Assembly: GCA_053919585.1 (NCBI GenBank)
Contig: CM132787.1
Direction: 5' to 3' (one strand)
DNA from: Euprymna scolopes
Taxonomy: Eukaryota
Length of the DNA stretch: 64,000 nucleotides
Below, piece by piece: positions 3,836 through 54,599 of the stretch. The position numbers were made by a program, and so were the translations under genes. Every line of letters begins with the position of its first letter. The first letter of the stretch is position 1. The notes under the pieces were generated by a model, which did not search any database, was not told where the DNA came from, and saw only the letters and a program-made list of their open reading frames with translations.

Positions 3836-4484
3836 GAGGGTGCATATGTCATGATCGAGTCGAAAGAATATTCCATTTTGACAAAATTTCCTAGTTAGCA
3901 TGAATGATGTGTTCTGGACTGGTAAGCAAACCAGTCTGCGAACCAAACATTCTTAACGCTGGCCAATATTAAATATTAAGGACACCTTCGCTAGTAATCA
4001 TTTTAAAAACAAAAGTTCACTGAAAGATTGTTGTTCGGTTAAGCAGGATGTAAGGAGTTAGATCGTTCTACTTTAGAAGCCATCGTCTTCCGATGAAAAA
4101 ATAAAGAACCAATGAGTTTGACTTGAGAATGTGATTTGCGATCGAACGCAAAACAAAATTATTTAAATATCAATAATAAACAAAAAAGGGGCCGAGGTTC
4201 CAAATCATTAACACCAAATCTTTTTTTTTTTTTACCTCGAACGCTAGCAAAAATAAAAAAGTTAAAAATAATGTCCCTTGGTTAGATCTTTTTTTTATCA
4301 TTATAGCGGGAATGGCCCGTTATTCGGCTGATTTTTTAATTACGACGAATAATATAATTTATAATATGTTTATATTTATTTGAAACGTTGCTGCTTTAAA
4401 TGATTTATGCATTTTATCTTTATAACTAATTATGTTAGTTTATTTGCCGCAAAGAATATCAACGCAACAACAGCAACAACAGAT

Positions 4485-4960
4485 AACGGTGGCTAAATGG
4501 TTAACGAGAGGACTGAAATTTGGGTGTGACAAGTTCGAATCTTGTTCATTCTCTAGAAACACTTTTACTGATGGATGTTGGCAACTTTCATCTGGTTCTT
4601 CCCGTTAATAAGTATCTTATAGCTTTCTAGATATAATCCTGACTAGAAAGATAGTAGAGAAACGAATGCCATCAAAAATCATCTGATTCATACGAAATAA
4701 ATGAATAATGATCAGCAACAACAACAACAACAACAACAACAATAATAAGAAGAAGAACAGGGAGGTGACGGTGGCTAAGTGGTCAACGACATGGACTGAA
4801 AGCCTGGTTATGTCTAGTTCGAACCCAGTTTATTCCACAGAAAGACTTTCAATTAGGGATGTTGGCAAACTTCACGTGGTCCTTCTAGTAAGTACCTTGT
4901 ATTCTTTTAGAAATAATTCGCAATATCGGGGAAACGAATAGCAACAAAATCATCATGGGT
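4485..4960 (+). mobile_element. Two tandem copies of a tRNA-derived SINE
   Basis: A box TGGCTAARTGG, B box GTTCGAA, shared body GGATGTTGGCAA..CTTCA..TGGT, (CAA)n tails; a third copy lies at 48240-48445 (-). Confidence 0.75.
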
Positions 4961-16043: not shown

Positions 16044-18400
16044 TTTTTTTTTTTTTTTTTTTTTTTTTATTACATTTTCACCCCAAACAAGGCAAATTGC
16101 CACTTTGGTGTAGGGGGCTACTATCAGGGGCAACAACTACTGGGGTACTATGTAGGGATTTGGGCAGCAAGGTGTCGGTTCACGTTACACTTGAACTTCT
16201 GCACGTCAGTACTGTTGGGGAAGCAGGGACCTGGAATGGAATTCCAGAGTCTTGCGGTTCTGGGGAAGAAACTATTGGAGTAAAAAGATCTTTTACATCT
16301 AGGGACCTCTACAGTGTGGGGGTGGGATCTAGTAGCCTGTCGGGTTTGTCGAGGGTGCTCGCGTCGTGGGGGCACAAGTGATTGCAGTTCATCAGAGCAT
16401 TCACCACTAAAATACTTGTAGAACAGGCAGAGGGATGCAACATTTCGTCGATGGGACAGAGGCTGAAGCTTAGATGCCAGTTCAGGGCCTATCAGATTTG
16501 CGACTCTCTTTTGAACCTTGTCAAGGAGCGAGAGACTAGTAGCAGATGCACCAGCCCAGATGTGGCAGCAATACTCCATACATGGGCGAATGGTGGCCTT
16601 ATAGAGGTACAGGATACTTTCGGGTGTTAGTAGTTTTCTAGCACGGTAGAGAGAGCCTACCTTTCTTGCAGCGGCCCTGGCAATGCCTTCAATGTAATTG
16701 TTCCAACTCATGTTTCCTGTGAACGTTAGGCCAAGGAGTTTGAAAGATGGACTCTCAGATAAAGGGTCGTTGGCCATTGCTATTGGTGGTAGAGAGGGTT
16801 TCTTGTAATTATTGAATGAAACTAGTTTAGTCTTGGCAGCATTGAACGCGACCAACCACTTTTGTCCCCATTCCACTACAGATTGGAGGTCTTCCTCTAG
16901 TGTTTCTGCCATTTCTTTAGAAATGTGTTCATTCGTCTTCCTGTCGTGTCTGCCATAGAGTGTAGTGTCATCAGCATATATACCCATCTCAGAGGCAATG
17001 TTGTCGGGGAGGTCATTTATGAATATCAGGAACAATAGAGGTCCAAGGATAGAACCCTGGGGCACTCCCGCATTTATATCATATTGTTTAGATGTGCGAC
17101 CGTCGAGGACTACCTGGATTTTTCTCTTATCTAAGAAGGATTTAATTATGTTAAGTATTCTACCAGTGATACCGTAAGATCTAATCTTCCTGAGGAGACC
17201 CTCATGCCATACCCTGTCAAAAGCCTTAGATATATCTAGAGCTACCGCTCTGCCTTCCCCCGCTTTGTCCAGTGATTGGTATATACGTTCAGAGATCACG
17301 GTGAGGATGTCTGCTGTGGAACAGGCTTGTCTAAATCCATATTGTTTGTCAGTCAGTAGTTTAGCATCTGTAAGATGCTGGACTAGAGCATGGTTAATTA
17401 TGGTCTCAAATATTTTGGCAAAAAGTGGGAGGAGGCTAATGGGGCGATAATTTGATGGGTCTGTCCTTTCGCCAGAATTCTTGAATACTGGTACAACAGA
17501 AGCAGTTTTCCAACAGCCCGGAAAGCAAGCTTCATTAAGACATTTGTTGTAGAGTTTGGAGAGAACTGGAGCTACTTCGGCTGAGCACTTTTTTAATAGC
17601 ACAGCTGGGATAAGATCGGGTCCACATGCTTTTGAGGTGTCAAGGTTTTTTATGATAGCATGCACCTGAGCAGGGGTGGTTTTCAGATCGTCTAGTGTGG
17701 CGTCTGTCCGCATAGGAAAGTCAGGTAGGGGGTGGTTGGAAGGGTCCAGTGTGGAGTTTGAGGCAAACCGACTGGCAAGCATGTTAGCCTTGTCGGTTGC
17801 TGAGGAGACAACCTCGTGATTGTTGGTTAGTGGGGGAATTGTTGATTGCCCATTATTTACTACACTGTTGTAGATTTTCCAGAAGTCTCGAGTTCCTAGT
17901 TTTTGTGCTTCGATGCGCTTTTTAGTGGTTTCCGTAAATTCTCTCTTAGCTGTCGCTATTTCTTTCTTAACGTTATTTCTAGCTTCTATATACTTCAGTC
18001 TGTTTGAACTGGACTTATGTCGGTTAAACCTACGGTATGCATGCTGCTTTTGAGTAATGGCAGTTGCACAAGTCGACGTAAACCATTGGGGAGAGTGGGG
18101 CTTACTATAAAATTTCCGCATGGGAACATGCGCTTCGATTGCAGTTTTGAACCAGTCAGTGGTCTCGTTTGCACACTGTTCAGCAGGGAGAGAGAAAATA
18201 TTTTTCCATGGAGCATCTCTAATTAGTTCCCTGATGGCTTCCCAGTCAGCCTTATTATAATATCTCGTTGTTTTGAGCACTGGCTCTTCAGTTTTGGGAC
18301 TAGAGTTTAGGGCGATTTCAACCATTATCACTGCATGATCAGCGTTCCCGAGTGGGCTGTGGGCCTTCGCTATGCAGTCATCGGGAACTGTGGTCAAAAA
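16044..18400 (-). mobile_element. Young 5'-truncated CR1/Zenon-type LINE
   Basis: Intact ORF, 3' UTR with GGCAA-T-TTGCC stem-loop, ~25-nt poly(A), possible target-site duplication AAGTGTT. Confidence 0.95.
16148..18397 (-). CDS. LINE ORF2 reverse transcriptase (end of APE domain plus RT plus C-terminus; true start missing)
   Basis: 749 aa open: PLGNADH, NYRPISLL, QYGFR, LDISKAFDRV, GVPQGSILGP, YADD, MEYCCHIWAG. Confidence 0.92.
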   Translation of the reverse strand: MTTVPDDCIAKAHSPLGNADHAVIMVEIALNSSPKTEEPVLKTTRYYNKADWEAIRELIRDAPWKNIFSLPAEQCANETTDWFKTAIEAHVPMRKFYSKPHSPQWFTSTCATAITQKQHAYRRFNRHKSSSNRLKYIEARNNVKKEIATAKREFTETTKKRIEAQKLGTRDFWKIYNSVVNNGQSTIPPLTNNHEVVSSATDKANMLASRFASNSTLDPSNHPLPDFPMRTDATLDDLKTTPAQVHAIIKNLDTSKACGPDLIPAVLLKKCSAEVAPVLSKLYNKCLNEACFPGCWKTASVVPVFKNSGERTDPSNYRPISLLPLFAKIFETIINHALVQHLTDAKLLTDKQYGFRQACSTADILTVISERIYQSLDKAGEGRAVALDISKAFDRVWHEGLLRKIRSYGITGRILNIIKSFLDKRKIQVVLDGRTSKQYDINAGVPQGSILGPLLFLIFINDLPDNIASEMGIYADDTTLYGRHDRKTNEHISKEMAETLEEDLQSVVEWGQKWLVAFNAAKTKLVSFNNYKKPSLPPIAMANDPLSESPSFKLLGLTFTGNMSWNNYIEGIARAAARKVGSLYRARKLLTPESILYLYKATIRPCMEYCCHIWAGASATSLSLLDKVQKRVANLIGPELASKLQPLSHRRNVASLCLFYKYFSGECSDELQSLVPPRREHPRQTRQATRSHPHTVEVPRCKRSFYSNSFFPRTARLWNSIPGPCFPNSTDVQKFKCNVNRHLAAQIPT

Positions 18401-31019: not shown

Positions 31020-31161
31020 NNNNNNNNNNNNNNNNNNNNNNNNNNNNNNNNNNNNNNNNNNNNNNNNNNNNNNNNNNNNNNNNNNNNNNNNNNNNNNNNN
31101 NNNNNNNNNNNNNNNNNNNNNNNNNNNNNNNNNNNNNNNNNNNNNNNNNNNNNNNNNNNNN

Positions 31162-31589
31162 GGACAGCCCGGCTTTGTCCGAGCATAAAATACGCTTAAA
31201 TATGATATTTTAATTTGTCCAGATTTCGCATATATTATTATAGAAGCGTAATTTCAAAAGTAAAAAAAGAAATATTTGGATGCCATCAGCTAGAATCAAA
31301 ATCAAAACTGTAGCATTCAAAGCTGGTGACGTTACCACTATACCAACGTGACACACATATGAACTGAATAAAAATTAAAAATTAAAATAAACTAATATGA
31401 ATGTACAAAATGTATAACGATTTTTTATTCAATTTTGACCCATTTTTGACCCCTTAAAAACTTTTGTAACCTGCTAAAAACCAATAAAAGAACGCCCCAT
31501 AAAATATCCAATCATTTGAGGCCCTAACACCGCTCTGCGACTTTTAGTTTCGGAGAGACAGACAGACATATAGTCTTTTATATATTAGA
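31162..31589 (-). mobile_element. Non-autonomous Helitron carrying a decayed tRNA-like segment
   Basis: 5' TCTAATATATAAAAG, 3' GC hairpin next to the gap; TGGTATAGTGG A box on the minus strand at ~31335-31345. Confidence 0.6.
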
Positions 31590-34535
31590 TATATAATATA
31601 TGTTATATATATGTAATATATGTTATATATATGTAATATATGTTATATGTGTAATATATGTTATATATATGTGATATATGTTATATATATGGTATATATA
31701 TATATGTTAGGTATGTAATATATGTAATATATATATAATATGTGTTATATATACATGTAATATATGTTATATAGATGTAATGTATATTATATAGATGTAA
31801 TATATATGTTATATATATGAAATATATGTTATATGTGTAATATATGCTATATATATGTGATATATGTTATATATATGTGATGTATGTTATATATATGTAG
31901 TATATGTTATATATATGTGAAATATATATGTAATATATGTTATATGTATATATATATATGCTATATATATAATATATATTTTATATCTTATATATTTTTT
32001 TGGAAAAAGATTTCCGCCTCAACAGTAAAATATTAAACAAACTGTTTAACTGGAAAATTATTTTACTGAAAACGATTGATTAATATCAAAATATAAAAAA
32101 GAAGATACTAGAATTAAAAAAATATTTTATTTACACTAAATCAGATGTTCCTTATGAACTAATGAAAATGAAATTGACATTTTTTTTTTGCATTTTTTAA
32201 GATTTATAAATATTTATAAATTCTCTCATTATAAAAATACGATTATTATTGGTATATATATTATATTTATGCAATATTTATATATGTGTATGTTATATAT
32301 ATGTGTGTATGGTATATATATATATGTGTGTATGTTATATATATGTGTATGTTATATGTATGTGTATGTTATATGTATGTGCATGTTATATACATGTGTA
32401 TGTTATATGNNNNNNNNNNNNNNNNNNNNNNNNNNNNNNNNNNNNNNNNNNNNNNNNNNNNNNNNNNNNNNNNNNNNNNNNNNNNNNNNNNNNNNNNNNN
32501 NNNNNNNNNNNNNNNNNNNNNNNNNNNNNNNNNNNNNNNNTATGTTATATATATATGTGTATGTTATATGTATGTGTGTATGTTATATATATGTGTGTAT
32601 GTTATATATCTGTGTATGTTATATATACATGAGTATGTTATATATGTGAGTATGTTATATATCTGTGTATGTTATATATATGTGTGTATTATATATATAT
32701 GTGTATGTTATTTATATGTGTATGTTATATGTATGTGTGTATGTTATATATATGTGTATGTTATATGTATGTGTGTATGTTATATGTATGTGTGTATGTT
32801 ATATATATGTATGTTATAGATGTGTGTATGTTATATATCCGTGTATGTTATATATATGTGTGTATGTTATATATCTGTGTATGTTATATATATGTGTGTG
32901 TATGTTATATATATGTATGTTATATATATGTGTATGTAATATGTATGTGTGTATGTTATATATATATATGTATGTTATATATATATGTGTGTATGTTATA
33001 TATGTGTGTATGTTATATATATATGTGTGTGTATGTTATATATGTGTGTATGTTATATATATGTGTATGTTATATATGTGTATGTTATATATATGTGTAT
33101 GTTATATGTATGTGTGTACTTTATATATATGTGTGTATGTTATATATATGTGTGTATGTTATATTTCTGTGTATGTTATATGTACATGTGTATGTTATAT
33201 GTTTGTGTGTACGTTATATATATGTGTGTGTATGTTATATATATGTGTATGTTATATATACATGTGTATGTTATATATGTGAGTATGTTATATATCTGTG
33301 TATGTTATATATATGTGTGTATTTTATATATATGTGTATGTTATTTATATGTGTATGTTATATTTATGTGTGTATGTTATATATATATGCGTATGTTATA
33401 TGTATGTGTGTATGTTATATATATGTATGTAATATATGTGTGTATGTTATATATCCGTGTATGTTATATATATGTGTGTATGTTATATATNNNNNNNNNN
33501 NNNNNNNNNNNNNNNNNNNNNNNNNNNNNNNNNNNNNNNNNNNNNNNNNNNNNNNNNNNNNNNNNNNNNNNNNNNNNNNNNNNNNNNNNNNNNNNNNNNN
33601 NNNNNNNNNNNNNNNNNNNNNNNNNNNNNNNNNNNNNNNNNNNNNNNNNNNNNNNNNNNNNNNNNNNNNNNNNNNNNNNNNNNNNNNNTGTGTGTGTATG
33701 TTACATATATGTGTATGTTATACATATGTGTATGTTATATATATATGTGTATGTTATATATATGTGTATGTTATATATATGTGTGTATGTTATATATATA
33801 TGTGTATGTTATATATATGTGTGTGTATGTTATATATGCGTGTATGTTATATGTATGTGTGTATGTTATATATGTGTGTATGTTATATATATGTGTGTAT
33901 GTTATATATATATGTATGTTATATATATGTGTATGTTATATATATGTGTGTATGTTATATATGTGTGTGTACGTTATATATATGTGTGTGCATGTTATAT
34001 ATATGTGTATGTTATATGTATGTGTGTATGTTATATATGTGTGTATGTTATGTATATGTGTGTATGTACTATATATATGTGTATGTTGTATATGTGTGTG
34101 TATGTTATATATGTGAGTATGTTATATATACGTGTATGTTATATATATGTGTGTATGTTATATATATGTGTATGTTATATATATGTGTGTATATGTTATA
34201 TATATATGTGTATGTTATATATATGTGTGTATTTTAGATATATGCGTGTATGTTATATATATGTGTGTGTTATATATACGTGTGTATGTTACATATATGT
34301 GTGTATGTTATATATGTGTGTTTATTATATATATGTGTGTATGTTATATATATGTGTATGTTATATATATACGTATGTTATATATATGTGTGTATGTTAT
34401 ATATATGTTTGTGTTATATATATGTGTGTATGTTATATGTATATGTGTATGTTATATATTTGTATGTTATATATGTGTATGTTATATATATGTGTATGTT
34501 ATATGTATATGTGTATGTTATATATTTGTGTGTTA
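31590..34535. repeat. Compound TA/TG-derived satellite (TGTATGTTATATATATG variants) with gaps
   Basis: Read directly; explains all the YICVCM-type ORFs. Confidence 0.95.
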
Positions 34536-35164
34536 TCATGAAATAATTTTCTACATTTACTTTTTCTTTTCTCACTATGTTTGTTTCTTGTTTAGTATCT
34601 CCCTATTTTGTTCCTATTCCTATTCCTTGCTACGATAATACACCTTTCTGTTTGTTCTGGTTTATATACTTGTTTGTTATATATTATTATATATTTATTG
34701 TTATATATATTATATTATACATGGTTATATATACTTCTATTGTTTTTGCAATCCACACAGTTTAATTATTAGTCCACTTCCCACTTTTTCTCCTTTGTAC
34801 GTATTTTACGAATTTTGAACAATGCAGACAGTTCTGAATGATCTCATATTATTCGTTAATTATGACATGTATAGATATTTTTTTATCACAAAATTTGAGA
34901 AATAAGGGAATTAAATCGCAATCAAGAGATTCTGCAATCTGTCATGGATAATATTTTGGAAAGAACACAAATATGCTAAGTGGAAAATTGACAACATTTT
35001 AAAGACATTATTTTTATAAATAAAGACTAATTGAATTTCGCATTGTTTTTATTTAATTCCCCAATGTGTTAGTCAGATCGTGTTCAAATTACAGACGCAT
35101 ATAATAAAAAATAAAGAATTTATTTAAATTCAAAATCCTTCAGTGACTTTTGGACACCCTGTCT

Positions 35165-37770: not shown

Positions 37771-37797
37771 CACTGATGAGTTGTGGTATAGCGAAAC

Positions 37798-37802
<5 letters not shown>
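37771..37802 (+). ncRNA. Truncated hammerhead-like motif
   Basis: CTGATGA-GTTGT(GGT)ATAGC-GAAA-CATTTC, then (AT)n. Confidence 0.45.
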
Positions 37803-37870
<68 letters not shown>

Positions 37871-39475: not shown

Positions 39476-39811
39476 ACTATTATGAATATTTATATATATA
39501 ACTATTATGAATATTTATATATATAACTATTATGAATATTTATATATATAACTATTATGAATATTTATATATATAACTATTATGAATATTTATATATATA
39601 ACTATTATGAATATTTATATATATAACTATTATGAATATTTATATATATAACTATTATGAATATTTATATATATAACTATTATGAATATTTATATATATA
39701 ACTATTATGAATATTTATATATATAACCATTATGAATATTTATATATATAACTATTATGAATATTTATATATATAACTATTATGAATATTTATATATATA
39801 ACTATTATGAA
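39476..39811. repeat. 25-bp minisatellite, 13 copies (ACTATTATGAATATTTATATATATA)
   Basis: Period of 25, near-perfect copies. Confidence 0.95.
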
Positions 39812-40087: not shown

Positions 40088-41059
40088 GTGATTGATGGAC
40101 AAAAATCAGAGGCCTGCAGTATTAATGCTGGAGTCCCTCAAGGGTCAATCCTGCGCCCAACTCTCTTCCTGATCTACATCAATGATCTCCCTAAACACAT
40201 ACTTAAATCATTCGTTGACATCTATGCTGATGACACGACCATCTACGGTAACACATCAAAGGCTGTAAATGACAAAGCTCTCTCTGACTCTCTCTCCTCT
40301 GATCTCGAGCGCATGGTTCAGTGGGGGAAGTCGTGGCTGGTTACCTTTAATGCATCTAAAACCAAACTCCTATCTTTACATCATCAACGCTCTGATCCCC
40401 ATCTGGCATCAATTGAAATGGATGGCTCTCGTCTAGGAGAAGCCCTATGTTTTGACAAGCTTCTGGGTTTGTCCTTTACTCCTGATCTGAAATGGAACAC
40501 GTACATCAAGTCTGTTGCCAAGGTCGCTGGAAAGATGGTGGGATCCTTCTACCGCTCCAGAAGATATCTCACTACTGATGCAATTCTCTATCTATATAAA
40601 AGTCAAGTACGTCCAAGGATGGAATACTGCTGCCATATCTGGGCAGGAGCTGCTATAAACAGCCTATCCTGCCTTGACAGAGTACAAAATATACTTCGTG
40701 GCTTAGTGGGAGATGCCCTTTTCTCTACCCTGCAACCTCTTTCCCACAGAAGAGACGTTGCGAGCCTATCCTTGTTTTATCGTTATTTCAATGGCAGGTG
40801 CTCGTCTGAACTTCAATCTCTGGTCCCCCCTCGCCAATCCTTTACGAAAAACACCCGTCTAGCTGAATCCACTGTGAAAAATTTCCCCCACTCTTTATCT
40901 GTGCCTAAATCAAAGCGTAGATTCCATGAACAAAGCTTCTTTCTTAGAACTGCACGCCTGTGGAACTCTGTTCCGTCTGCCTGCTTCCCACCTGACTACA
41001 ACTTGGATGTCTTCAAGTCCAACGTTAATAAATTCCTAATGAACCGCCCTCTTAAGTAA
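40088..41059 (+). CDS. RT C-terminal half of a second CR1/Zenon LINE family (5'-truncated, ORF open)
   Basis: 323 aa: GVPQGSIL, YADD, QVRPRMEYCCHIWAGA, RTARLWNS. Confidence 0.9.
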   Translation: MIDGQKSEACSINAGVPQGSILRPTLFLIYINDLPKHILKSFVDIYADDTTIYGNTSKAVNDKALSDSLSSDLERMVQWGKSWLVTFNASKTKLLSLHHQRSDPHLASIEMDGSRLGEALCFDKLLGLSFTPDLKWNTYIKSVAKVAGKMVGSFYRSRRYLTTDAILYLYKSQVRPRMEYCCHIWAGAAINSLSCLDRVQNILRGLVGDALFSTLQPLSHRRDVASLSLFYRYFNGRCSSELQSLVPPRQSFTKNTRLAESTVKNFPHSLSVPKSKRRFHEQSFFLRTARLWNSVPSACFPPDYNLDVFKSNVNKFLMNRPLK

Positions 41060-41764
41060 ACACTTCATTAAATCTCCACACTATGGTATAACTGAGTCAT
41101 AAATTTTCTTTATTTAATTTATGCATTTGTAGTCAAATTTTCAACTTTTTGGCGGCAAAGGAAAATGTCTCTGAAAAATACTGAAACCTTTTCTAAATTT
41201 ACTTTTACATATAGCAGCAACTTTTAGCACTTTCGAAAAGCAAACTGTATATGTCACTACACCCTAATAGAGAGAGAGATAGATAGATGCTATTTTATTT
41301 TTTTTGCTTTTGCTATACGTTTTGAATGAATTCAATTATTTATACCAAAGTGCATTTTTACCTAAATGCGAGTTGGGAATAATTTTCCCTTTGACCAATT
41401 TAGTACCCCAAAAAGGGATGTTGAACAGTATGGAGTGTTTCTGCTTAATAATCTTTCTTATAATTTCTTCAGTTTTCGTATGGGCCTTCTAATATTTCGG
41501 TCGAATTTGTGTAAGAAAGTTGCATAGTCGTTTTCGTCGCTCTGTTTTTTTTTTGCAAGTTCGTTCAACTGATTTTCTTCAGTCGTCTTTTTTGAATATT
41601 GTTTAAAATCTGGATGCTTTTATATGCTTCAGTTTAAATTACATTTCAAATTAATTAAAATAGTGAATGGTTAAGAACGTAGCTAAAATAAATGTACAAT
41701 GGTTTAAAAGTGTCATTTACAAAATAGCATGGAAGTTACAATTACAACGTAGTTAAATTTTAAC

Positions 41765-42600: not shown

Positions 42601-44284
42601 ANNNNNNNNNNNNNNNNNNNNNNNNNNNNNNNNNNNNNNNNNNNNNNNNNNNNNNNNNNNNNNNNNNNNNNNNNNNNNNNNNNNNNNNNNNNNNNNNNNN
42701 NNNNNNNNNNNNNNNNNNNNNNNNNNNNNNNNNNNNNNNNNNNNNNNNNNNNNNNNNAATGGCAGTTATAAAAAACATTGATTCTTTCTAAAGTTTACAG
42801 GCGTTGAGAGAATATTAATATCTCGGGTTTAAATTTCTCATAGTAGTTTATTATTATTGTAATGCTGTTTTTGCCGTATATATATTTGATAAAAAACGAC
42901 ATTATTTTTGAACCAACCTAATATCTGTGTACAATATTTCTATCGCTTTTTATTCTAATTTTAAGTTTAGTTGCATTTTACCATAGTTGTAGAAGCTAAT
43001 AGTGTTTGAGATATGACGTTGGGTATTGGTATTTTAAAAGTTTTAACTCAGTAATGCTATTATTTTATCGACGATATAATTAGAGCATTCGTTTTTGATA
43101 AGAATTTGGTTGATATGGTTTATTAAATTTTTAACAAATGGTTATTGAAATTTCAAAGACAAGAATTTGAGCGGATTGGTTTTTATAATTAATAACTAAT
43201 AGTGCTAATTATTAGCATAAGAACATCAAGGAATAGGATTTTATTTTTATGTTTCATTCTACTGGAATACGATAAGAGTATACGGAAAGCATTTTGGGAA
43301 GATGAAATTAAAGCACAATAAACAGATGCAGGCAGTGTTCGCTAAATCTGAATTCCGTTAAACCTCTATTCTGGAATGTCGAAAATCTTAAGTTTAATCA
43401 TTTCTTTTTAGTTTAAACACAATAGTTTGTTTAAATATTTATAAGGAATAAAACATAATTAAGTAGCTTACGTTAACGGAAGCTGACTGTGCGTAAATAT
43501 GTTATTATGCCCAAAATATTATAATGCAAATAAATAAAAATAAAGGAGCAGGATCGTTTGTGTAAGAAAACTTTCGCCGGCTGAATATCAATTTGATAAT
43601 CTGGTATTCCGTCAATTGAGAATGTAAACGAAAAGTCTTTGGAATAGCAAATCAAACACCACCTTAAAGAAAATATAGGTTAGGGAGACGTTCTGTACTT
43701 GGGTGGAAAATGTAGTTATTTAGCTTCCTCACGGTGGGAAGATGTGACACAAGGCTCGAAAAGTTGAACTGACGAGTTAGCGCCCTAGTGGAATAGCAGT
43801 CTGTCCTGCAAAAAATGCATGAACAGCTCCGTCAGTATTTCCGGTAGGAGTGTAACGTTATTTGAATAATCTTCGCTAACGTTTTATGACTCCATCGCAA
43901 AGGCAAATAATTAACTTTTGCACAACTCTTCTTAGTGGAGTGCAAAGGGATTTATTTCATCATTTCACATAACTAAAAAGGTATTCGCTATTAATACAGA
44001 AAACTAATCCGTGATCCCCACTGATACGGCGACCAGTTTTACAAAGTTCGACTTTTCTTTAAAATAGGGAGAGAGAATAGACTCGCGCGTTCGCCGAATG
44101 TCACTGCCAACGGCGGCTTCTTTTCCTTTTCTGACATTCCCCTCTCCTCTTACCTATCCTCTTGCTCAGCTTCTGCTATATTTGATATTCAGCTATACAT
44201 TTTTGTATTTGAGCCTGTGACGTCATACTTACACCAGGCTCTCAAATGCTAACGCGATTATGTTACAGAAGTGCATCTGGCATA

Positions 44285-45125
44285 ACATTAATGCAAGAGT
44301 GATTCAGGGGTCGATCCTTAAACCACTATTATTCCTGATATTCATTAACGACTTCCCTAATAATATTGTGTCCGAGATGGGTATATTTGCTAGGAATACA
44401 ACGCTCTATAATATGCATGAGGGAAGAACTGATGTACATAAATTAAAGACAATGGCAGAATCATTAGAAAATGACCTCCAGATCGTAGTGGAATGGGGCG
44501 GTAAATGGATGGTAACATTTAATGCTAGTAAGATTAAGTTGCTCTCCTTTAACAGTGAGGATATTGCGAAGACTGCTGCAAAGAAGGTGGATTTCCTCTA
44601 TCGAACTAGACGACTACTGGCCAGCATTCGCCCGTGCATGGAGTATTATTGACACATCTGGGCTGGTGCACATACCACTAGCCTTTCACTCTCAGATAGG
44701 GTCCAAAAAAGAATTTTCAATCTAATATATCCTACTTTGTCAAATAAGCACCAACCCCTGTCCCATCGCCGCAATGTTGCATTTCTGTACCTGTTTCACA
44801 AATATTTTAATGGAATGTGCTTTGATGAACTTTCTGCACTTGTGCTCCCGCGACGTACATATTCCCGACACACCCGCTTAGCAACAAAATCTCACCCCTT
44901 CACTATTGAGGTTCCTAAATGCCAGAAAGCTTTCTACTCTAATAGCTTCTTCGCTCGAACAGCTAGACTTTGGAATTACCCTTTTTGTTACCTGCTTCCC
45001 TGATTTTCAGAAATTTAAATGTAACGCAAACTAACATCTTAATCTTTTCTAGATAATGTCCTAAATAGTAGCCCCTTACGTTCAAGTGGCGATATGCTTT
45101 GTTGGATGTGAACGTGAGTAAAAAC
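44285..45125 (+). mobile_element. Decayed CR1/Zenon LINE 3' fragment
   Basis: ORFs 44260 and 44737; 3' UTR present. Confidence 0.88.
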
Positions 45126-48734: not shown

Positions 48735-51300
48735 AATTCTGTAGCAATTATTATATGGTACGCACTGCTAGTTATAAGAAGAGGGAAAACTGGAACCAGT
48801 GAAGGTATGAAACTGCTCAACGAGGTGAACATGACACCGACAAATATTTGTGAGTTTTGGAAGCAGACAACACGAAAGCAACAGAAATGAAAGAAAATGG
48901 AAAAGGAATATATCAAAAGAATAAGAAATATTAAGTAAACTACGAGGGGCTTGCAATAAGTAATGCCCCTGACCCACTTCCAATTATCTGATCTAGCTGA
49001 AATTTTGCATGTGCAATGATTTATATCTCTACGGGTTATGTGGCAAATTACAGCTCTGAAATAATTGTGGTTTATGTTTTACAGGTGTTTGAATTAAGTC
49101 AGGCGTGAAATGGAACCTGTTGAATGTCGAGCAGTGATCCGGTTTTTGTATTTGAAAGGACGCACACCACAGGAGACTTTTGATGAAATGAAAGAAACTT
49201 ACGGTGATAATGCCTCATCATATGACTTTGTAAAACGCTGGCATCATGAATACAAACATGGCCGGAAGTATGTGGGAACAGCTCCCAGACCTGGTCGCCC
49301 CCCTTCTGCCATTGATGAGGCATCTGTCCGTCAAGTTGAGGCTGCGATTTTGGAAGATCGGCGCATTACTATTCGCCAAATAACCCCAAGATGTCAAGAT
49401 TAGTACAGGATCCGTGGAAACTATCATTCATGACCATTTGCATATGCATAAGGTGTCTGCCAGATGGATTCTCAGGTTGCTCACGCCATTCCGAGAATGC
49501 GTCGAGTGCTCGAGGATGAATTTGGAGATGTGCCAAGAAGATGAGTCAAAGTTTTTTAAAGACTGATTACACAGGATGAAACCTGGGTCCATCACTATGA
49601 TCCAGAGACCAAAGCCCAGTCAATGCAGTGGAAGCACTTGGACTCACCACCTCCAAAGAAGGCAAGGGTGCAGCCCTCCGCTGGCAAGGTCATGCTCGTA
49701 GTCTTCTGGGACCAGGACGGAGTAGTGATGACAGATTTCCTGACAAAGGGTACCACAATTACAGGAGCCTATTATGCTTCACTTTTGAGAAAATTAAGGG
49801 AAGCTATCAAAATCAAGAGGCGGGGCAAGATCAGGAAAGGTACCCTCCTTCTGCAGGACAACGCTCCGGTCCACAACTCGCATGCCGCCAGATCAGAAGC
49901 ACAGGCGTTCGGTTATGAAATCCTTCCCCATCCTTCCTACTCTCCTGACCTTGCACCCTCTGACTTTCACCTCTTCCTAGCCATGAAGTTGTTTTTGAAA
50001 GGAAAGTGTTTCCCAGATGATGTAGCCTTGATTTCTGAAGTCACGTCATGGTTGGAGGACCAACCTGGGATGTTCTACAAAAAACGGTCTCCACAGCTGC
50101 ATCAAACGATGGGAAAAATACATAACTCTGGGTGGTTTCTATGCAGAGAAAGACTAATAACTGTGCCAAGTTTCGTTACTCTACTTCTATGGGAAGTGGG
50201 TCAGGGACATTGCTTATTGCACGCCCCTCGTATATAGTATAAAATCCTAATAAAAGGCATAAACACATAGACAGTGCAACTATTAAGATATTCTAGATCA
50301 TTTATCGGTTGAACCAAAGAAGAACTGAAGCATCTAGATTAGAAGACTAGGAAACTTATGACTATGCATAATGCACTGCATTCAAAGGATGATGTTGGCT
50401 GATTCTACTTGAAAAGAAAAGACGGAGAAAGAAGACTGGTTTGTATAGAAGACTGTATTGATTGGCACAAAAAATAGAAAAATACATAATGCAGAACACA
50501 GAAAAGATAAGTACTGCAATAAGAGACACCGAAAAATTTAAAAAAAAAACCCAGAGAGGTAATTGATAAGACAAGAACAAAAATGGGAACAGAAACATCT
50601 GCATGGACGATTCATAAAGATGACAAATGATGAGATTAACGCAAAAACGAAACCTAAACATAGAAACTAAATCTCTAATAATAGCCGCAAACGATAACGC
50701 AATTAGAACCAACTACGAAGCAAATATCGACAACACACAAGAACACAGCAAATGCATACTCTGTGGACAAAGAGACGAAACATTAAACGATATAATAAGT
50801 AAATTAGACCAAAAAGGTATAAAAGAATAGACACGATCAATTGGAGAACACAGTACACTCGGGATTATGCAGATAACTGCATCTTAATTATCTAAACAAA
50901 TAGTACAAACACAAACCGGCAGCAATACTTGAAAACGAAAATCACAAAATCCTATGGAATATGAGCGTACAAACAGATAAATCCATCCAAGCAAGAAGAC
51001 CGGATGTCATAATTGTTAATAAGAAGGAAACGTCTTCTTAGATTGTAGAATTTTCCGTTTCAGCAGATCACAGAGTGAATATCTTGGAGAAGAAAATACA
51101 CAGAACTGGTTAGAGATTTGAAAAAAATATGCAAGATGAAATAAGTTAAGATGACACCAATAATAGTAGGAGCAGTAAGAACAATCCCGAAAGACTTAAA
51201 AAAAAGATGGAAAAGGTTTGAATCAGAGGGATGGCTAAGAATATACAACGGATAACAATTACGAAAACGGCTGAAATATTAAGGAAAATCCTTAAATGCA
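48735..51300 (+). mobile_element. R4/Dong LINE relic interrupted by a mariner
   Basis: KEYIKRIR before and KGINT..KTRKLMTMHNALH..LIIAANDNAIRTN..CILCG..RRPDVII after the mariner. Confidence 0.85.
48943..50230 (+). mobile_element. Full-length mariner (DD34D), frameshifted transposase from 49110 to ~50150
   Basis: ~39-bp TIRs CGAGGGGCTTGCAATAAG.../...CTTATTGCACGCCCCTCG, TA duplication, QDETWV, QDNAPVH, YSPDLAPSDFHLF. Confidence 0.96.
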
Positions 51301-52620: not shown

Positions 52621-53623
52621 TGTAAGAGATTTGAGATTCTCAGTTTTATTAAAGTAGAAGTCGCGCCTAAATATGTGTGAGTTATTATATCGGATTTCAA
52701 TTTTGTTCCATTATTTAAGTGTCTGTTTAGGTTATTATCGGGATTGGCATTTAAAATAGGGTGCTTTTGAATTGAATAACTTTCAGGAGAGAGCCAAATG
52801 TATGTTGATCAGTTTACTGTGGTAAAACCATTATAGGAATTAATTTGTGGGTTGTCGTTATTTAATGTGGCCATATGGTTTACTGTATTTGGAATATTTT
52901 GGTCGGAGTCATCGGTTAATATGCTATCTTAATGGGCTTCATGCATGGGCAATTGTGTCACCTTGCAAGACTATACAGCGTCTTTATGTCTTTATTACAT
53001 ATATATTTTATGTTGTCACACACACACACACACACACACATACACACACACATATATATATACATATATTACATACATTATTATTCAGAGGGGGATGTGA
53101 GTTTTTTTTTATTTTCATGTTATTGGAAGATATGACTGTTTGCGTTAAATTCGGCATAGTTGAGTATGATACTTTTTTGATAGTTGAGTATGATATTTTT
53201 TAAAAGTCTCTCTTTTTTATTTTTTAATTTTTGTCTTTATTTTAAATCTAAAAATATCGGATTTCAAATTCTAAATATCTTGATTTTATCAAGACTAATT
53301 AACTATTTGGACTATTAATTTTGAACAAGTGGATTTTACTTTATAAAGAAGAACATCTTTCTACGGATATTTTCTACGCATACTACACCACCAAAAAATG
53401 AGGCATGAAAAATGGGTAAATCTGAATTCCCAAGAATTATTGCCTCTTACTCTAGATTGGATTGGAATCTATTCAAGAATTACTATTCCAAATCTTATTT
53501 TTGTTTCAACCCTTATTTTCATTCTCTATGTTCCTTAAAAAGATTTAATCTTTAATATATTTTCTATGTATGTGCAGAATAGCAAAATTATATCAAACCA
53601 GATTTAATATTTTGTTAATGACT

Positions 53624-53672
53624 TTTCCTCTGAGGAGATGAGCCCACATCGAAAATCCATGGATTAAAGAAA
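53624..53672 (+). ncRNA. Type I hammerhead ribozyme, near-canonical
   Basis: TTTCCT-CTGAGGA-GATG(AGCCCA)CATC-GAA-AATCCATGGATT-A/AAGAAA; one mismatch in stem I. Confidence 0.7.
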
Positions 53673-54047
53673 TTATTTTGAATATTGTATTCTTTGTTCA
53701 AATAATAATTTTTTGTTTTGAAAAATCATGTTTTTCTGAATGAAATTTATGTATAAAAACTATAAATTTTTTATTTGCTCTATCTAGTATATTGAGAAAT
53801 TTTTATTTGGCTGGGATTGTCTTATATAAAAATATTACTCCTCAAAAATATTTTTAAGACTTTATATCACAAAATTCAATAATTTATGATATAATTCATC
53901 TCATTATTCTGTTATTTATTTGTTTTTTTTTTTGCAATATGTTTTTGAATGAGTTCACTTATTTATAGGAAAGTGCATTTTTATCTAAATGTGAGTTCGG
54001 AAGAATTTTCCATTTTACCAAATTTGTACCGCCAGATGGGGAGCGGC

Positions 54048-54365
54048 ATATATATTGTTTTTAAAATATAATTATCCACTGACACGTGTTTCGTCGTCTA
54101 GGACTTATCAGAGTGGCTAAATCTAGTGAGATTCGAAATCGGGACCCCGTGGTAAGAAGCCCAAACTTCTACCACTGGACCATCTCGCACGACTGTTTGG
54201 ATAGATCGCGATTTACGTAGATGTTATTTATTTATTTTGTTTTTTTGCGATACGTTTTCGAATGAATTCAATTATTTATACGAAAGTATATTTTTACTTT
54301 GATTCACCACTCTGATGAGTCGTAGACGACGAAACACGTGTCAGTGGATAATTATATTTTAAAAT

Positions 54366-54372
<7 letters not shown>
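54048..54372. mobile_element. Fold-back element: ~68-bp inverted arms containing HHRs, with an internal tRNA-like promoter
   Basis: 54048-54116 is the reverse complement of 54307-~54372; minus-strand A box TGGTCCAGTGG and B-box-like TTCGAATC at 54122-54188. Confidence 0.85.
54307..54347 (+). ncRNA. Canonical minimal type I hammerhead ribozyme
   Basis: CCACT-CTGATGA-GTCG(TAGA)CGAC-GAA-AC(ACGT)GT-C/AGTGG: all core bases present, three perfect stems, GUC cleavage after 54342. Confidence 0.9.
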
Positions 54373-54430
<58 letters not shown>

Positions 54431-54599
54431 CGTGTGTGTGTGTGCGTGTACTTCATTTCATTTTTATATTTTTATTTTCTATCCATTATACACTGTTTTT
54501 AAACACGTCTGTCACAAAATCTATTTCTATCCCCCTCTCCCTCACTCTTTATATGTTGTTCTATCTGTATTTTCTTTCCATTATTTATTCAAGTTTTTT

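What the first reader, a model, noticed from the sequence alone, without database searches (positions are those of the whole stretch)
54048..54372. Intact hammerhead ribozyme in a palindromic element with a tRNA-like Pol III promoter
Seen: the plus-strand arm is a complete minimal type I HHR (GUC site, palindromic ACACGTGT helix III). The inverted arm has the same HHR with a G8-to-A change and a stem II mismatch. A tRNA-like A/B box lies between them, pointing at the minus-strand HHR, and TA runs flank the element. Known: Schistosoma SM-alpha repeats combine a tRNA-like promoter with an HHR in direct orientation. Inference: this is a self-transcribing, self-cleaving fold-back SINE-like element. 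If it is intronic in a plus-strand gene, the intact arm could cut the pre-mRNA. An internal segment recurs at 41285-41400 and 53905-54020.
Basis: partly seen in the sequence, partly recalled or inferred. Interest (0 to 1): 0.8.

Follow-up and report, generated by a model that had tools for sequence, protein, structure and literature searches.

The report
Hammerhead retroposon copy with inverted arm
This is one ageing copy of a very abundant short non-coding jumping element of a large mollusc genome that pairs a tRNA-like promoter head with a small self-cutting (hammerhead) RNA motif. Its palindromic shape is most likely a scar of how the copy was inserted, not a working design.

Summary
Two 69-76 nt inverted arms (54048-54123 and 54301-54375, 93-96% alike) each carry a minimal type I hammerhead. 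The plus-strand one has every core nucleotide and a GUC site at 54342|54343. The minus-strand one has G8-to-A and a stem II mismatch. A tRNA-like A/B-box head (54194->54119, minus strand) lies between the arms, and TA repeats flank them.

Contigs from other genomic copies show that the family normally has head and hammerhead in the same orientation. The plus arm is therefore a 5'-truncated inverted copy. In other loci the inverted junctions fall at different positions.

This architecture matches published Penelope-like-element insertions: an inverted 5'-truncated copy, a possible partial tandem, TA-repeat flanks and 5' truncation. The promoter-like head points at the mutated hammerhead. The intact hammerhead has no promoter and a 2-bp helix III, the type that needs a dimer partner. 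In any transcript spanning both arms it would be buried in a ~75-bp hairpin. PolyA RNA reads show no ends at the predicted cut site and come almost entirely from other copies.

This scan has already reported the same kind of element on other DNA of this genome. It is a new member of a known kind (Penelope-associated minimal hammerheads, Schistosoma SM-alpha, animal retrozymes). Interest is modest.

The parts
54298..54375 (+). Inverted 5'-truncated copy ('plus arm'). It keeps about 9 nt of the head's 3' end, the complete minimal type I hammerhead (54307-54347, predicted cut 54342|54343), and the tail ATAATTATATTTTAAAATCA plus the first TA repeats.
   Evidence: Loose ends at 54307 show that other copies carry the sense head here, so this copy is truncated. 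The arm matches the family-majority letters at the hammerhead positions (table 3).
54048..54118 (-). 3' part of the full-length copy. It holds a hammerhead with G8-to-A (54106) and a stem II C-C mismatch (54101), with the predicted cut at 54081|54080. It also holds the tail with a T4 run (54066->54063, a possible Pol III terminator) and (TA)4.
   Evidence: At 54106 and 54101 most family contigs carry the letters of the plus arm, so both changes are private to this copy (table 3).
54119..54194 (-). tRNA-like head with A box 54182->54172 and B box 54139->54129. It ends 2 nt before helix I of the minus-strand hammerhead.
   Evidence: boxes. Searches find no tRNA. ARAGORN at a relaxed threshold finds a cloverleaf at 54194->54119 once five family-majority letters are put in.
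54195..54221 (-). 5' leader between the end of segment X2 and the head. Another genomic copy has a roughly 65-70% similar 25-nt stretch in the same place.
   Evidence: table 5c (54195->53910 with CTGGACATATCATTACTTACGTGGG between). Compared by eye.
54222..54297 (-). Segment X2, a truncated copy of the abundant 'X' repeat. It is cut at 54297, where 115 DNA contigs of other copies continue with X sequence. It shares its T-rich terminus (A-rich on the minus strand) with X1 and X3.
   Evidence: Loose ends at 54297.
53907..54047 (-). Segment X1, a near full-length X copy placed 312 nt in register with X2. It abuts the (TA)4 and the tail of the minus-strand hammerhead copy. It is either the body of the same 312-nt unit or an adjacent insertion.
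   Evidence: 79 contigs carry X sequence before 54036. RNA first mates show a 3:1 strand bias over 53950-54039.
41284..41423 (-). Segment X3, a solitary X copy without a hammerhead. It has the same terminus as X1 and X2 and lies next to a (GA)n(GATA)n run.
54368..54448 (.). Right-hand compound microsatellite, a (TA) run to 54414 followed by (TG)n.
   Evidence: In other copies the tail also abuts (TA)n (104 DNA contigs at 54048).
53895..53905 (.). Candidate target-site duplication TTCATCTCATT, matched by TTCATTTCATT at 54452-54462. If real, the whole of 53906-54451 is one insertion.
   Evidence: 11 nt with 1 mismatch. 3% of random pairs of pieces from the window do as well, so this is only suggestive.

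Best explanation
The locus is a single, complex, now inert insertion of a high-copy, non-autonomous retroposon.

Sense orientation of the element: the sense strand is the minus strand. The element consists of a short leader, a tRNA-like head with Pol III A and B boxes, and a minimal type I hammerhead that starts 2 nt after the head. An AT-rich tail with a T4 run and TA repeats follows. The X body, ending in an A-rich terminus, probably belongs to it too.

How the inverted arm arose (inferred): a Penelope-like-element (PLE) reverse transcriptase/endonuclease most likely made the copy. Such insertions typically carry an inverted 5'-truncated copy next to the 5' end, partial tandems, 5' truncation and TA-repeat targets. 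Here the inverted 5'-truncated copy is the 76-78 nt plus arm. It was made in the same event as the main copy, either by priming from the second target strand or by snap-back of the cDNA. That would explain why the two arms were once identical to each other and to the family majority.

Decay since insertion: three substitutions have accumulated between the arms. Two of them hit the hammerhead of the full-length copy (G8-to-A and stem II).

Role of the hammerhead (family level, inferred): it would process multimeric or read-through element RNA as a dimer through its palindromic ACACGUGU helix III.

At this locus nothing is expected to work. The Pol III-type unit (about 54200->54063) contains the dead ribozyme. 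The intact ribozyme is promoterless and has no same-strand partner. In a read-through transcript it is locked in a long hairpin.

Shown versus inferred: the anatomy, the family boundaries, the variable inverted junctions, the dimer and hairpin energetics and the lack of cleavage-site ends in polyA RNA are shown. PLE as the mobilising enzyme, Pol III transcription and ribozyme activity are inferred.
For: Anatomy.

Family evidence (14,152 DNA contigs laid at 85% likeness or more):
- 89 contigs have the sense head before 54307.
- 115 contigs continue with X after 54297.
- 104 contigs have (TA)n before 54048.
- Joints from 54076/84/90/92/94/100 to 54306-54338 show inverted arms of different lengths elsewhere in the genome.
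- Summed contig depth is about 230-290 thousand over hammerhead and tail, 106-141 thousand over the 3' half of the head, and only 6-24 thousand over the 5' half and leader. This is a 5'-truncation gradient.
- Family-majority letters at 54101 and 54106 equal the plus arm. The majority letter at 54365 equals the minus arm.

Folding: the dimer is -28.1 kcal/mol against -19.8 for two monomers, with an 8-bp intermolecular helix. The fold-back is -150.8 kcal/mol.

Literature:
- PMC8557442 describes PLE insertions with partial tandems, an inverted 5'-truncated copy that forms flanking inverted repeats, and (TA)n targets.
- PMC4209133 reports dual minimal hammerheads 100-700 bp apart on opposite strands. 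It also reports short palindromic helix III motifs that need dimers and cleave poorly in vitro.
- bioRxiv 10.64898/2026.07.22.740005 argues that animal retrozymes are non-autonomous PLE derivatives.
Against: - No PLE reverse transcriptase or GIY-YIG gene lies in the window. The RT ORFs present are LINEs. No PLE with a matching hammerhead or tail was shown.
- A textbook PLE inverted copy should end with the same 3' terminus as the main copy. If the unit includes X, the main copy ends at the X terminus (53907). The arm instead ends at the tail and TA run. That needs priming on the element's internal TA tract, or a second event.
- TA flanks make target-site duplications unreadable. The alternative 11-bp duplication is only suggestive.
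- The tRNA-likeness of the head is weak.
- Only the best-supported joints were listed (226 were not shown), so the spread of arm lengths rests on a handful of contigs.
Confidence: 0.68

Rival explanations
1. Retrozyme-array fragment. The true unit is a ~312-nt repeat made of head, hammerhead, tail, (TA)n and X. It propagates as hammerhead-processed, ligase-circularised RNA that is copied by rolling-circle reverse transcription. The minus strand carries 1.25 such units (54297->53907), and the plus arm was added at integration. This overlaps the best explanation. It differs in making X part of the element and a circular RNA the template.
For: - X2 and X1 lie 312 nt apart in register.
- The terminus of X abuts the leader and head here and in at least one other contig with a similar 25-nt leader (table 5c).
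- 79 contigs carry X sequence directly before 54036.
- X reaches a depth close to that of the hammerhead module (87-245 thousand against 230-290 thousand).
- Unit size and low GC fit published animal retrozymes of 170-400 nt (PMC7229834).
- Earlier notes of this scan describe 284-345-bp tandem units with a head fused to a hammerhead in this genome. I did not test those notes.
Against: - The locus has no two hammerheads in direct orientation, which is the defining feature of a retrozyme array.
- The leader and the 5' half of the head are 10-40 times less deep than X or the hammerhead. Most X copies and most hammerhead copies are therefore not joined through a head.
- X3 stands alone.
- The 'goes back 310' reads are explained by the paralogy of X1 and X2, not by a circular junction.
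- Another contig joins X to the antisense tail after only 26 nt of the X extension, so the junction varies (table 5c).
Confidence: 0.2
2. The palindrome is a functional design: a fold-back SINE whose internal tRNA-type promoter transcribes it and whose hammerheads cut it. The intact arm could also cleave a host pre-mRNA.
For: - The core of the plus-arm hammerhead is intact.
- The arms are 93-96% alike.
- A and B boxes are present.
- Inverted hammerhead pairs recur in the genome.
Against: - The arm junctions vary among copies, and the usual context of the hammerhead is a head in the same orientation.
- The promoter drives the G8-mutated motif.
- The intact motif has a 2-bp helix III and needs a partner (PMC4209133).
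- The predicted hairpin buries it.
- No ends were seen at the cut site and no sign that this locus is transcribed. Only 12-13 reads per run are 99% alike or better.
Confidence: 0.05
3. A DNA transposon or MITE with 69-76-bp terminal inverted repeats and a TA target duplication (Stowaway or mariner type) that happens to have captured hammerhead-bearing sequence.
For: - Terminal inverted repeats are flanked by TA on both sides.
- A mariner-type transposase fragment lies in the window at 49623-50237.
Against: - The depth gradient and the variable truncation points are those of reverse-transcribed copies.
- Most copies have only one arm, preceded by the head.
- The flanks are long TA microsatellites, not a TA dinucleotide.
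- The arm ends carry no recognisable transposase-binding terminus shared with the mariner fragment. I did not align them.
Confidence: 0.05

Closest known systems
Minimal, dimer-dependent type I hammerheads of Penelope-like elements (Cervera and de la Pena 2014, PMC4209133; Lunse, Weinberg and Breaker 2017, known to me only through its citation in PMC8490949)
   Same: - A complete core with a very short helix III and a palindromic loop that allows a two-molecule helix.
- Massive copy number.
- Pairs of motifs 100-700 bp apart on opposite strands.
- Low expected monomer activity.
   Different: Here the motif is not in the terminal repeat of a coding PLE. It lies directly behind a tRNA-like head in a short non-coding element. 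Helix II is 4 bp, as in canonical motifs, not the 7-8 bp reported for the schistosome min-HHR.
Schistosoma SM-alpha SINE-like elements (Ferbeyre et al. 1998, as described in PMC8490949)
   Same: A short (~335 bp), highly repeated, non-coding element that combines a Pol III-type tRNA-like promoter with a type I hammerhead in direct orientation.
   Different: The host phylum and the sequence are different. The schistosome ribozyme is a canonical motif with loop-loop contacts, a statement from my own knowledge. This one has a loop 2 but no closed loop 1, and a palindromic helix III. This copy also carries a PLE-style inverted arm and TA-repeat flanks.
Animal non-LTR retrozymes (Cervera and de la Pena 2020, PMC7229834; Li, Clavereau and Pollet 2026, bioRxiv 10.64898/2026.07.22.740005)
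   Same: Low-GC, ~300-nt non-coding units with type I hammerheads. A link to PLEs is proposed. A mollusc (mussel) is among the described hosts.
   Different: Retrozymes are defined by direct tandem units giving circular RNA. This locus has one hammerhead per strand, in inverted orientation. Retrozymes are not described with tRNA-like heads.
PLE insertion architecture (Craig, Yushenova, Rodriguez and Arkhipova 2021, PMC8557442)
   Same: An inverted 5'-truncated copy abutting the 5' side, a possible partial tandem, heavy 5' truncation and (TA)n microsatellites at the ends.
   Different: That description is for coding PLEs of 3-4 kb. Here the cargo is a ~170-310-nt non-coding element, and the 3' ends of the arm and the main copy may not coincide.

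Membership tests
Hammerhead ribozyme, type I (Rfam RF00163) | Conserved core: C3-A9 CUGANGA, G12-A14 GAA, the A15.1-U16.1 pair, H17 at the cut site, and open ends in helix I | tested here: met
   Plus arm 54307-54347 has all of these, with C17 at 54342. The minus arm fails at G8 (A at 54106).
Hammerhead ribozyme, type I (Rfam RF00163) | Score at or above Rfam's gathering threshold (34 bits) | tested here: not met
   25.4 and 20.7 bits. Minimal PLE-type motifs commonly fall short because helix III and the loops are reduced. That last point is from my own knowledge.
Hammerhead ribozyme, type I (Rfam RF00163) | Self-cleavage at the predicted site | tested here: inconclusive
   No pile-up of read ends and no drop in depth across 54342/3 or 54081/0 in two raw polyA RNA runs (table 6 and depth table). 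PolyA libraries and cross-mapping from other copies make this weak evidence.
PLE-associated dimeric minimal hammerhead | A short helix III with a palindromic loop that forms an extended intermolecular helix | tested here: met
   ACACGUGU is self-complementary. Cofolding gives an 8-bp intermolecular helix, -28.1 against -19.8 kcal/mol.
PLE-associated dimeric minimal hammerhead | Location in the terminal repeat (pLTR) of a PLE with RT and GIY-YIG genes | tested here: not met
   No PLE ORF lies next to it or anywhere in the window. The RT ORFs are LINE-type: homologues carry APE endonuclease domains, and two fragments have a CR1-like C-terminus. Whether a PLE elsewhere in the genome shares the module could not be tested.
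tRNA-derived SINE (SM-alpha-like) | Internal Pol III A and B boxes in a tRNA-related 5' head | tested here: inconclusive
   A box fits 10 of 11 positions, B box 8 of 11, with starts 43 nt apart. ARAGORN and Rfam tRNA are silent. A cloverleaf appears only at a relaxed threshold after five family-majority letters are put in. Lax box pairs are not rare by chance (1.8 per shuffled window).
tRNA-derived SINE (SM-alpha-like) | Short, non-coding, very high copy number, with 5'-truncated copies | tested here: met
   Thousands of DNA contigs match at 85% or more, with a 10-40-fold depth gradient from the 3' to the 5' part. No ORF lies in the element.
Animal non-LTR retrozyme | Two or more direct tandem units, each with a type I hammerhead | tested here: not met
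   There is one hammerhead per strand, in inverted orientation. Only the X segment repeats in direct order, at 312-nt spacing.
Animal non-LTR retrozyme | Unit-length linear and circular RNA | tested here: inconclusive
   The 'goes back 310' joints are explained by the paralogy of X1 and X2. PolyA libraries are unsuited to this test.
PLE-type insertion | An inverted 5'-truncated copy at the 5' side, with a different length at each insertion | tested here: met
   The plus arm is cut about 9 nt upstream of helix I. Other loci break at 54076-54100 (table 5). This matches the description in PMC8557442.
PLE-type insertion | Preference for (TA)n microsatellite targets | tested here: met
   TA repeats lie at both arm ends. 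104 DNA contigs of other copies have (TA)n before 54048. An element-internal TA tract is an alternative source of these repeats.
MITE / DNA transposon | Fixed terminal inverted repeats on most copies and a short fixed target duplication | tested here: not met
   Arm lengths vary, and most copies have the head rather than a second arm next to the hammerhead.

The most novel reading that the evidence does not exclude
These head-plus-hammerhead elements could be a true class of SINEs mobilised by Penelope-like elements rather than by LINEs. They would use an internal TA tract to prime on TA microsatellites. They would be abundant in a decapodiform-size cephalopod genome, although a recent cuttlefish genome paper reports 'almost no SINEs' and mostly unclassified repeats for such genomes (PMC13218726). 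As a by-product, their integration scars would scatter many near-perfect ~70-bp hairpins through transcribed DNA. Such hairpins are potential substrates for the very active RNA-editing or small-RNA machinery of cephalopods.
Probability: 0.3. Interest if true: 0.55.

Novelty: new member of a known kind. Interest (0 to 1): 0.3.

Why it matters
The locus itself matters little. It is one decayed copy, and the scan has already reported the family elsewhere in this genome.

The family has some value. It links three things usually treated separately: tRNA-headed SINEs such as SM-alpha, PLE-type minimal hammerheads, and retrozymes. It does so in a host group where I found no published description. This copy also shows plainly that 'palindromic ribozyme elements' in such genomes can be integration scars rather than designs. 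That point helps when reading other hits of this kind.

A census could test whether PLE enzymes have their own SINEs. It could also test whether part of the 'unclassified' repeat fraction of large cephalopod genomes consists of them.

Tried and rejected
- Rfam at gathering thresholds on the whole window found nothing. At lax E-values only the two arms appeared as hammerheads.
- ARAGORN found no tRNA in the window or in the head at relaxed settings.
- A metagenome scan for the ribozyme core found one contig, L001. It holds an unrelated element that shares only the GAAACACGUGUC helix III, so it gives no information about this family.
- I spent one large protein search on the 749-aa RT ORF at 16148-18397, hoping for a PLE. 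It is a LINE whose homologues carry an APE endonuclease. The RT fragments at 40088-41059 and 44260-45003 are CR1-like LINE tails.
- I tested whether an older copy of the element lies beyond the right-hand microsatellite, which would mean insertion into an older copy's TA tract. The local alignment score was 30 against a null mean of 29, so I rejected it.
- I tested whether 53690-53810 is a fourth X copy. The score was 60 against a null of 45 +/- 6 with a maximum of 69, which is not significant.
- I checked the mix of change types (A>G, T>C, C>T, G>A) in RNA against DNA for signs of editing over the hairpin. The proportions are broadly similar in both, and they are dominated by differences between copies.
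- A search of the scan's notes by sequence returned nothing.
- The paper of Lunse et al. 2017 is not held in the library.

Full report
**What is there**

The window is AT-rich (34% GC) and full of repeats. At 54048-54375 there is an inverted repeat. Arms 54048-54116 and 54307-54375 are 69 nt long and 96% complementary, with 190 nt between them. blastn extends them to 76 nt at 93%. A 58-nt module from helix I through the tail occurs exactly twice in the window, once per strand, and never in 100 shuffles.

Rfam's type I hammerhead model matches both arms below threshold. The plus arm scores 25.4 bits and the minus arm 20.7 bits, against a gathering score of 34. It matches nowhere else in the window.

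Read by hand, the plus-strand motif is complete:
- Helix I is CCACU/AGUGG.
- The core strand is CUGAUGA.
- Stem II is GUCG/CGAC with loop UAGA.
- GAAA follows, then a 2-bp helix III closed by the palindromic loop ACGU.
- The site is GUC, with the predicted cut at 54342|54343.

The minus-strand motif has A instead of G8 (54106) and a C-C mismatch in stem II (54101).

**The head**

Between the arms, on the minus strand, lie an A box (TGGTCCAGTGG, 54182->54172, 10 of 11 positions) and a B box (ATTTCGAATCT, 54139->54129, 8 of 11). They point at the mutated hammerhead, which begins 2 nt after the head. A T4 run follows at 54066->54063.

The tRNA relationship is weak for this copy:
- ARAGORN finds nothing, even at relaxed thresholds.
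- Rfam's tRNA model is silent at E up to 10.
- Box pairs at my lax thresholds occur 6 times in the window against 1.8 in shuffles.
- After substituting five letters that most other copies carry, ARAGORN at a relaxed threshold draws a cloverleaf at 54194->54119.

I call it tRNA-like and do not claim it is proven tRNA-derived.

**The recurring segment X**

All three share the same T-rich terminus on the plus strand, which is A-rich on the minus strand. They differ at the other end. This is the pattern of 5'-truncated retrocopies whose sense strand is the minus strand. RNA first mates over 53950-54039 show a 3:1 strand bias. That bias only shows that one strand of X dominates in RNA. It would favour the minus strand if the library is of the usual stranded type, which I could not check.

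X2 and X1 lie 312 nt apart in register.

**What other copies look like**

I laid Logan contigs of a DNA run, contigs of an RNA run, and raw reads of two polyA RNA runs on 53500-54376 at 85% likeness. 14,152 DNA contigs matched, so the whole stretch is repeat.

Loose ends mark the family boundaries:
- Before 54307, 89 DNA contigs and 38 RNA contigs carry ...GAATCTCGCTAGATTCAG. This is the 3' end of the head in the same orientation as the hammerhead. The plus arm is therefore a copy truncated about 9 nt upstream of helix I.
- After 54297, 115 contigs continue with X sequence, so X2 is cut at that point.
- Before 54048, 104 contigs have TA repeats.
- Before 54036, 79 contigs carry X sequence.

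Other observations from the same call:
- In other loci the antisense arm breaks off at 54076, 54084, 54090, 54092, 54094 or 54100 before a sense copy resumes. Inverted arms therefore recur, but with different lengths.
- Summed depth is about 230-290 thousand over hammerhead and tail, 106-141 thousand over the 3' half of the head, and 6-24 thousand over its 5' half and the leader. This is a 5'-truncation gradient.
- At 54101 and 54106 the family majority equals the plus arm. At 54365 it equals the minus arm. Both arms therefore began as consensus-like sequence, and three substitutions have accumulated since.

**RNA evidence**

About 1,200-1,300 raw reads per run matched. Only 12-13 were 99% alike or better, and about 87% ran on into unlike sequence. 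They come from other copies, in both orientations. There is no evidence that this locus is transcribed, and its gene context could not be established.

No position passed the tool's test for many molecules beginning or ending. Depth does not drop across either predicted cut site. The libraries are polyA-selected, so this is weak negative evidence.

**Folding**

Two plus-arm motifs cofold at -28.1 kcal/mol against -19.8 for two separate monomers. They form an 8-bp intermolecular ACACGUGU helix with helix I made in trans. This is the dimer geometry described for metazoan and PLE hammerheads (PMC4209133).

A transcript of 54040-54380 is predicted to fold back at -150.8 kcal/mol on the plus strand and -140.8 on the minus strand. 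The hammerhead is then paired along its whole length with its antisense arm.

**Interpretation**

The anatomy matches published descriptions of Penelope-like-element insertions. [quoted passage not shown] They also report (TA)n as a preferred target (PMC8557442). Cervera and de la Pena report dual minimal hammerheads 100-700 bp apart on opposite strands (PMC4209133).

I therefore read the locus as one complex insertion of a non-autonomous, tRNA-like-headed, hammerhead-bearing retroposon that was probably copied by a PLE enzyme. The palindrome is the integration scar.

The locus looks inert. The promoter-like head drives a G8-mutated ribozyme. The intact ribozyme has no promoter and no same-family partner on its strand, and its predicted fold is a hairpin.

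**What remains open**

(a) Is X the body of the same ~312-nt unit or a separate element that often lands beside it? In favour of one unit: the 312-nt register, a second contig with X next to a similar leader, and the 79 contigs at 54036. Against: the depth trough over the leader and 5' head, the solitary X3, and a contig with a different X/tail junction.

(b) Why does the arm end at the tail and TA run, while the main copy may end at the X terminus? Priming on an element-internal TA tract or cDNA snap-back would explain it, but neither is shown.

(c) A candidate 11-bp target duplication (53895-53905 / 54452-54462) would make 53906-54451 a single insertion. However, 3% of random pairs of pieces do as well.

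(d) No PLE gene lies in the window. The RT ORFs are LINEs.

**Comparison and novelty**

The element works like SM-alpha (a Pol III-type head plus a hammerhead; PMC8490949 citing Ferbeyre 1998). It also resembles PLE minimal hammerheads and is close to animal retrozymes (PMC7229834; bioRxiv 10.64898/2026.07.22.740005). This locus fails the retrozyme definition because it has no direct tandem of hammerheads.

I found no paper describing hammerhead elements in cephalopods. A recent cuttlefish genome paper reports almost no SINEs in decapodiform genomes (PMC13218726). I did not establish which species this window comes from. Earlier notes of this scan call it a 5.9-Gb cephalopod genome.

Those notes already describe tRNA-headed hammerhead elements, some with Penelope-style inverted arms, on other pieces of this genome. 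I treated them as leads, and my tests agree with them. The verdict is a new member of a known kind, already seen by this scan, of modest interest.

Noticed in passing
window 53624-53672 (+): A second hammerhead-like motif from a different repeat family. It reads CUGAGGA, stem II GAUG/CAUC, GAAA, a 12-nt palindrome AAUCCAUGGAUU as helix III, and a UA site. Most other genomic copies carry G at 53668, which would restore a helix I pair. Rfam does not call it even at E 10, and the minimum-energy fold is not the hammerhead fold.
   Followed up: partly
window 4470-4560 and 4755-4850 (+): Two copies, about 282 nt apart, of another SINE-like element with a good tRNA-type head (TGGCTAAGTGG ... AGTTCGAACCC). 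Each is followed by a body and a (CAA)n-type tail. No hammerhead is present.
   Followed up: partly
window 16148-18397 (-): A 749-aa open reading frame of a LINE. It has an RVT_1 domain, and its homologues at 45-60% identity carry APE-type endonuclease domains, so the N-terminus is truncated here.
   Followed up: yes
window 40088-41059 (+) and 44260-45003 (+): Two fragments of a CR1-like LINE: the end of the RT and a C-terminal domain with the ...FF.RTARLWN... motif. The first ends about 225 nt upstream of the solitary X copy at 41284, with a (GA)n(GATA)n run between them.
   Followed up: partly
window 49623-50237 (+): A mariner-type transposase fragment (Pfam Transposase_1, E 4e-22).
   Followed up: no
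window 37773-37807 (+): CTGATGAG...GAAAC lies directly against a long (TA)n run (37802-37869). It fits only a loose hammerhead descriptor, with no clear helices. It may be a decayed relic or chance. The descriptor gave 6 matches in the window against 1.4 expected.
   Followed up: partly
window 39482-39800: A tandem array with a period of about 25 nt, seen as a ladder of blast hits to the AT-rich tail.
   Followed up: no
window 31020-34640: A long TA/TG-rich, microsatellite-like stretch interrupted by three N runs. The long 'ORFs' listed there are artefacts of the repeat.
   Followed up: no
L001 1250-1420 (-): A metagenome contig with a complete type I hammerhead (CUGAUGAGUCCCAAAGGACGAAACACGUGUC). 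It shares helix III with this element but nothing else. It is followed by imperfect repeats of GGTGTTGGAAAAGTATGTAAGAGTGCCTTGAGCAAGCACTCTAC.
   Followed up: no
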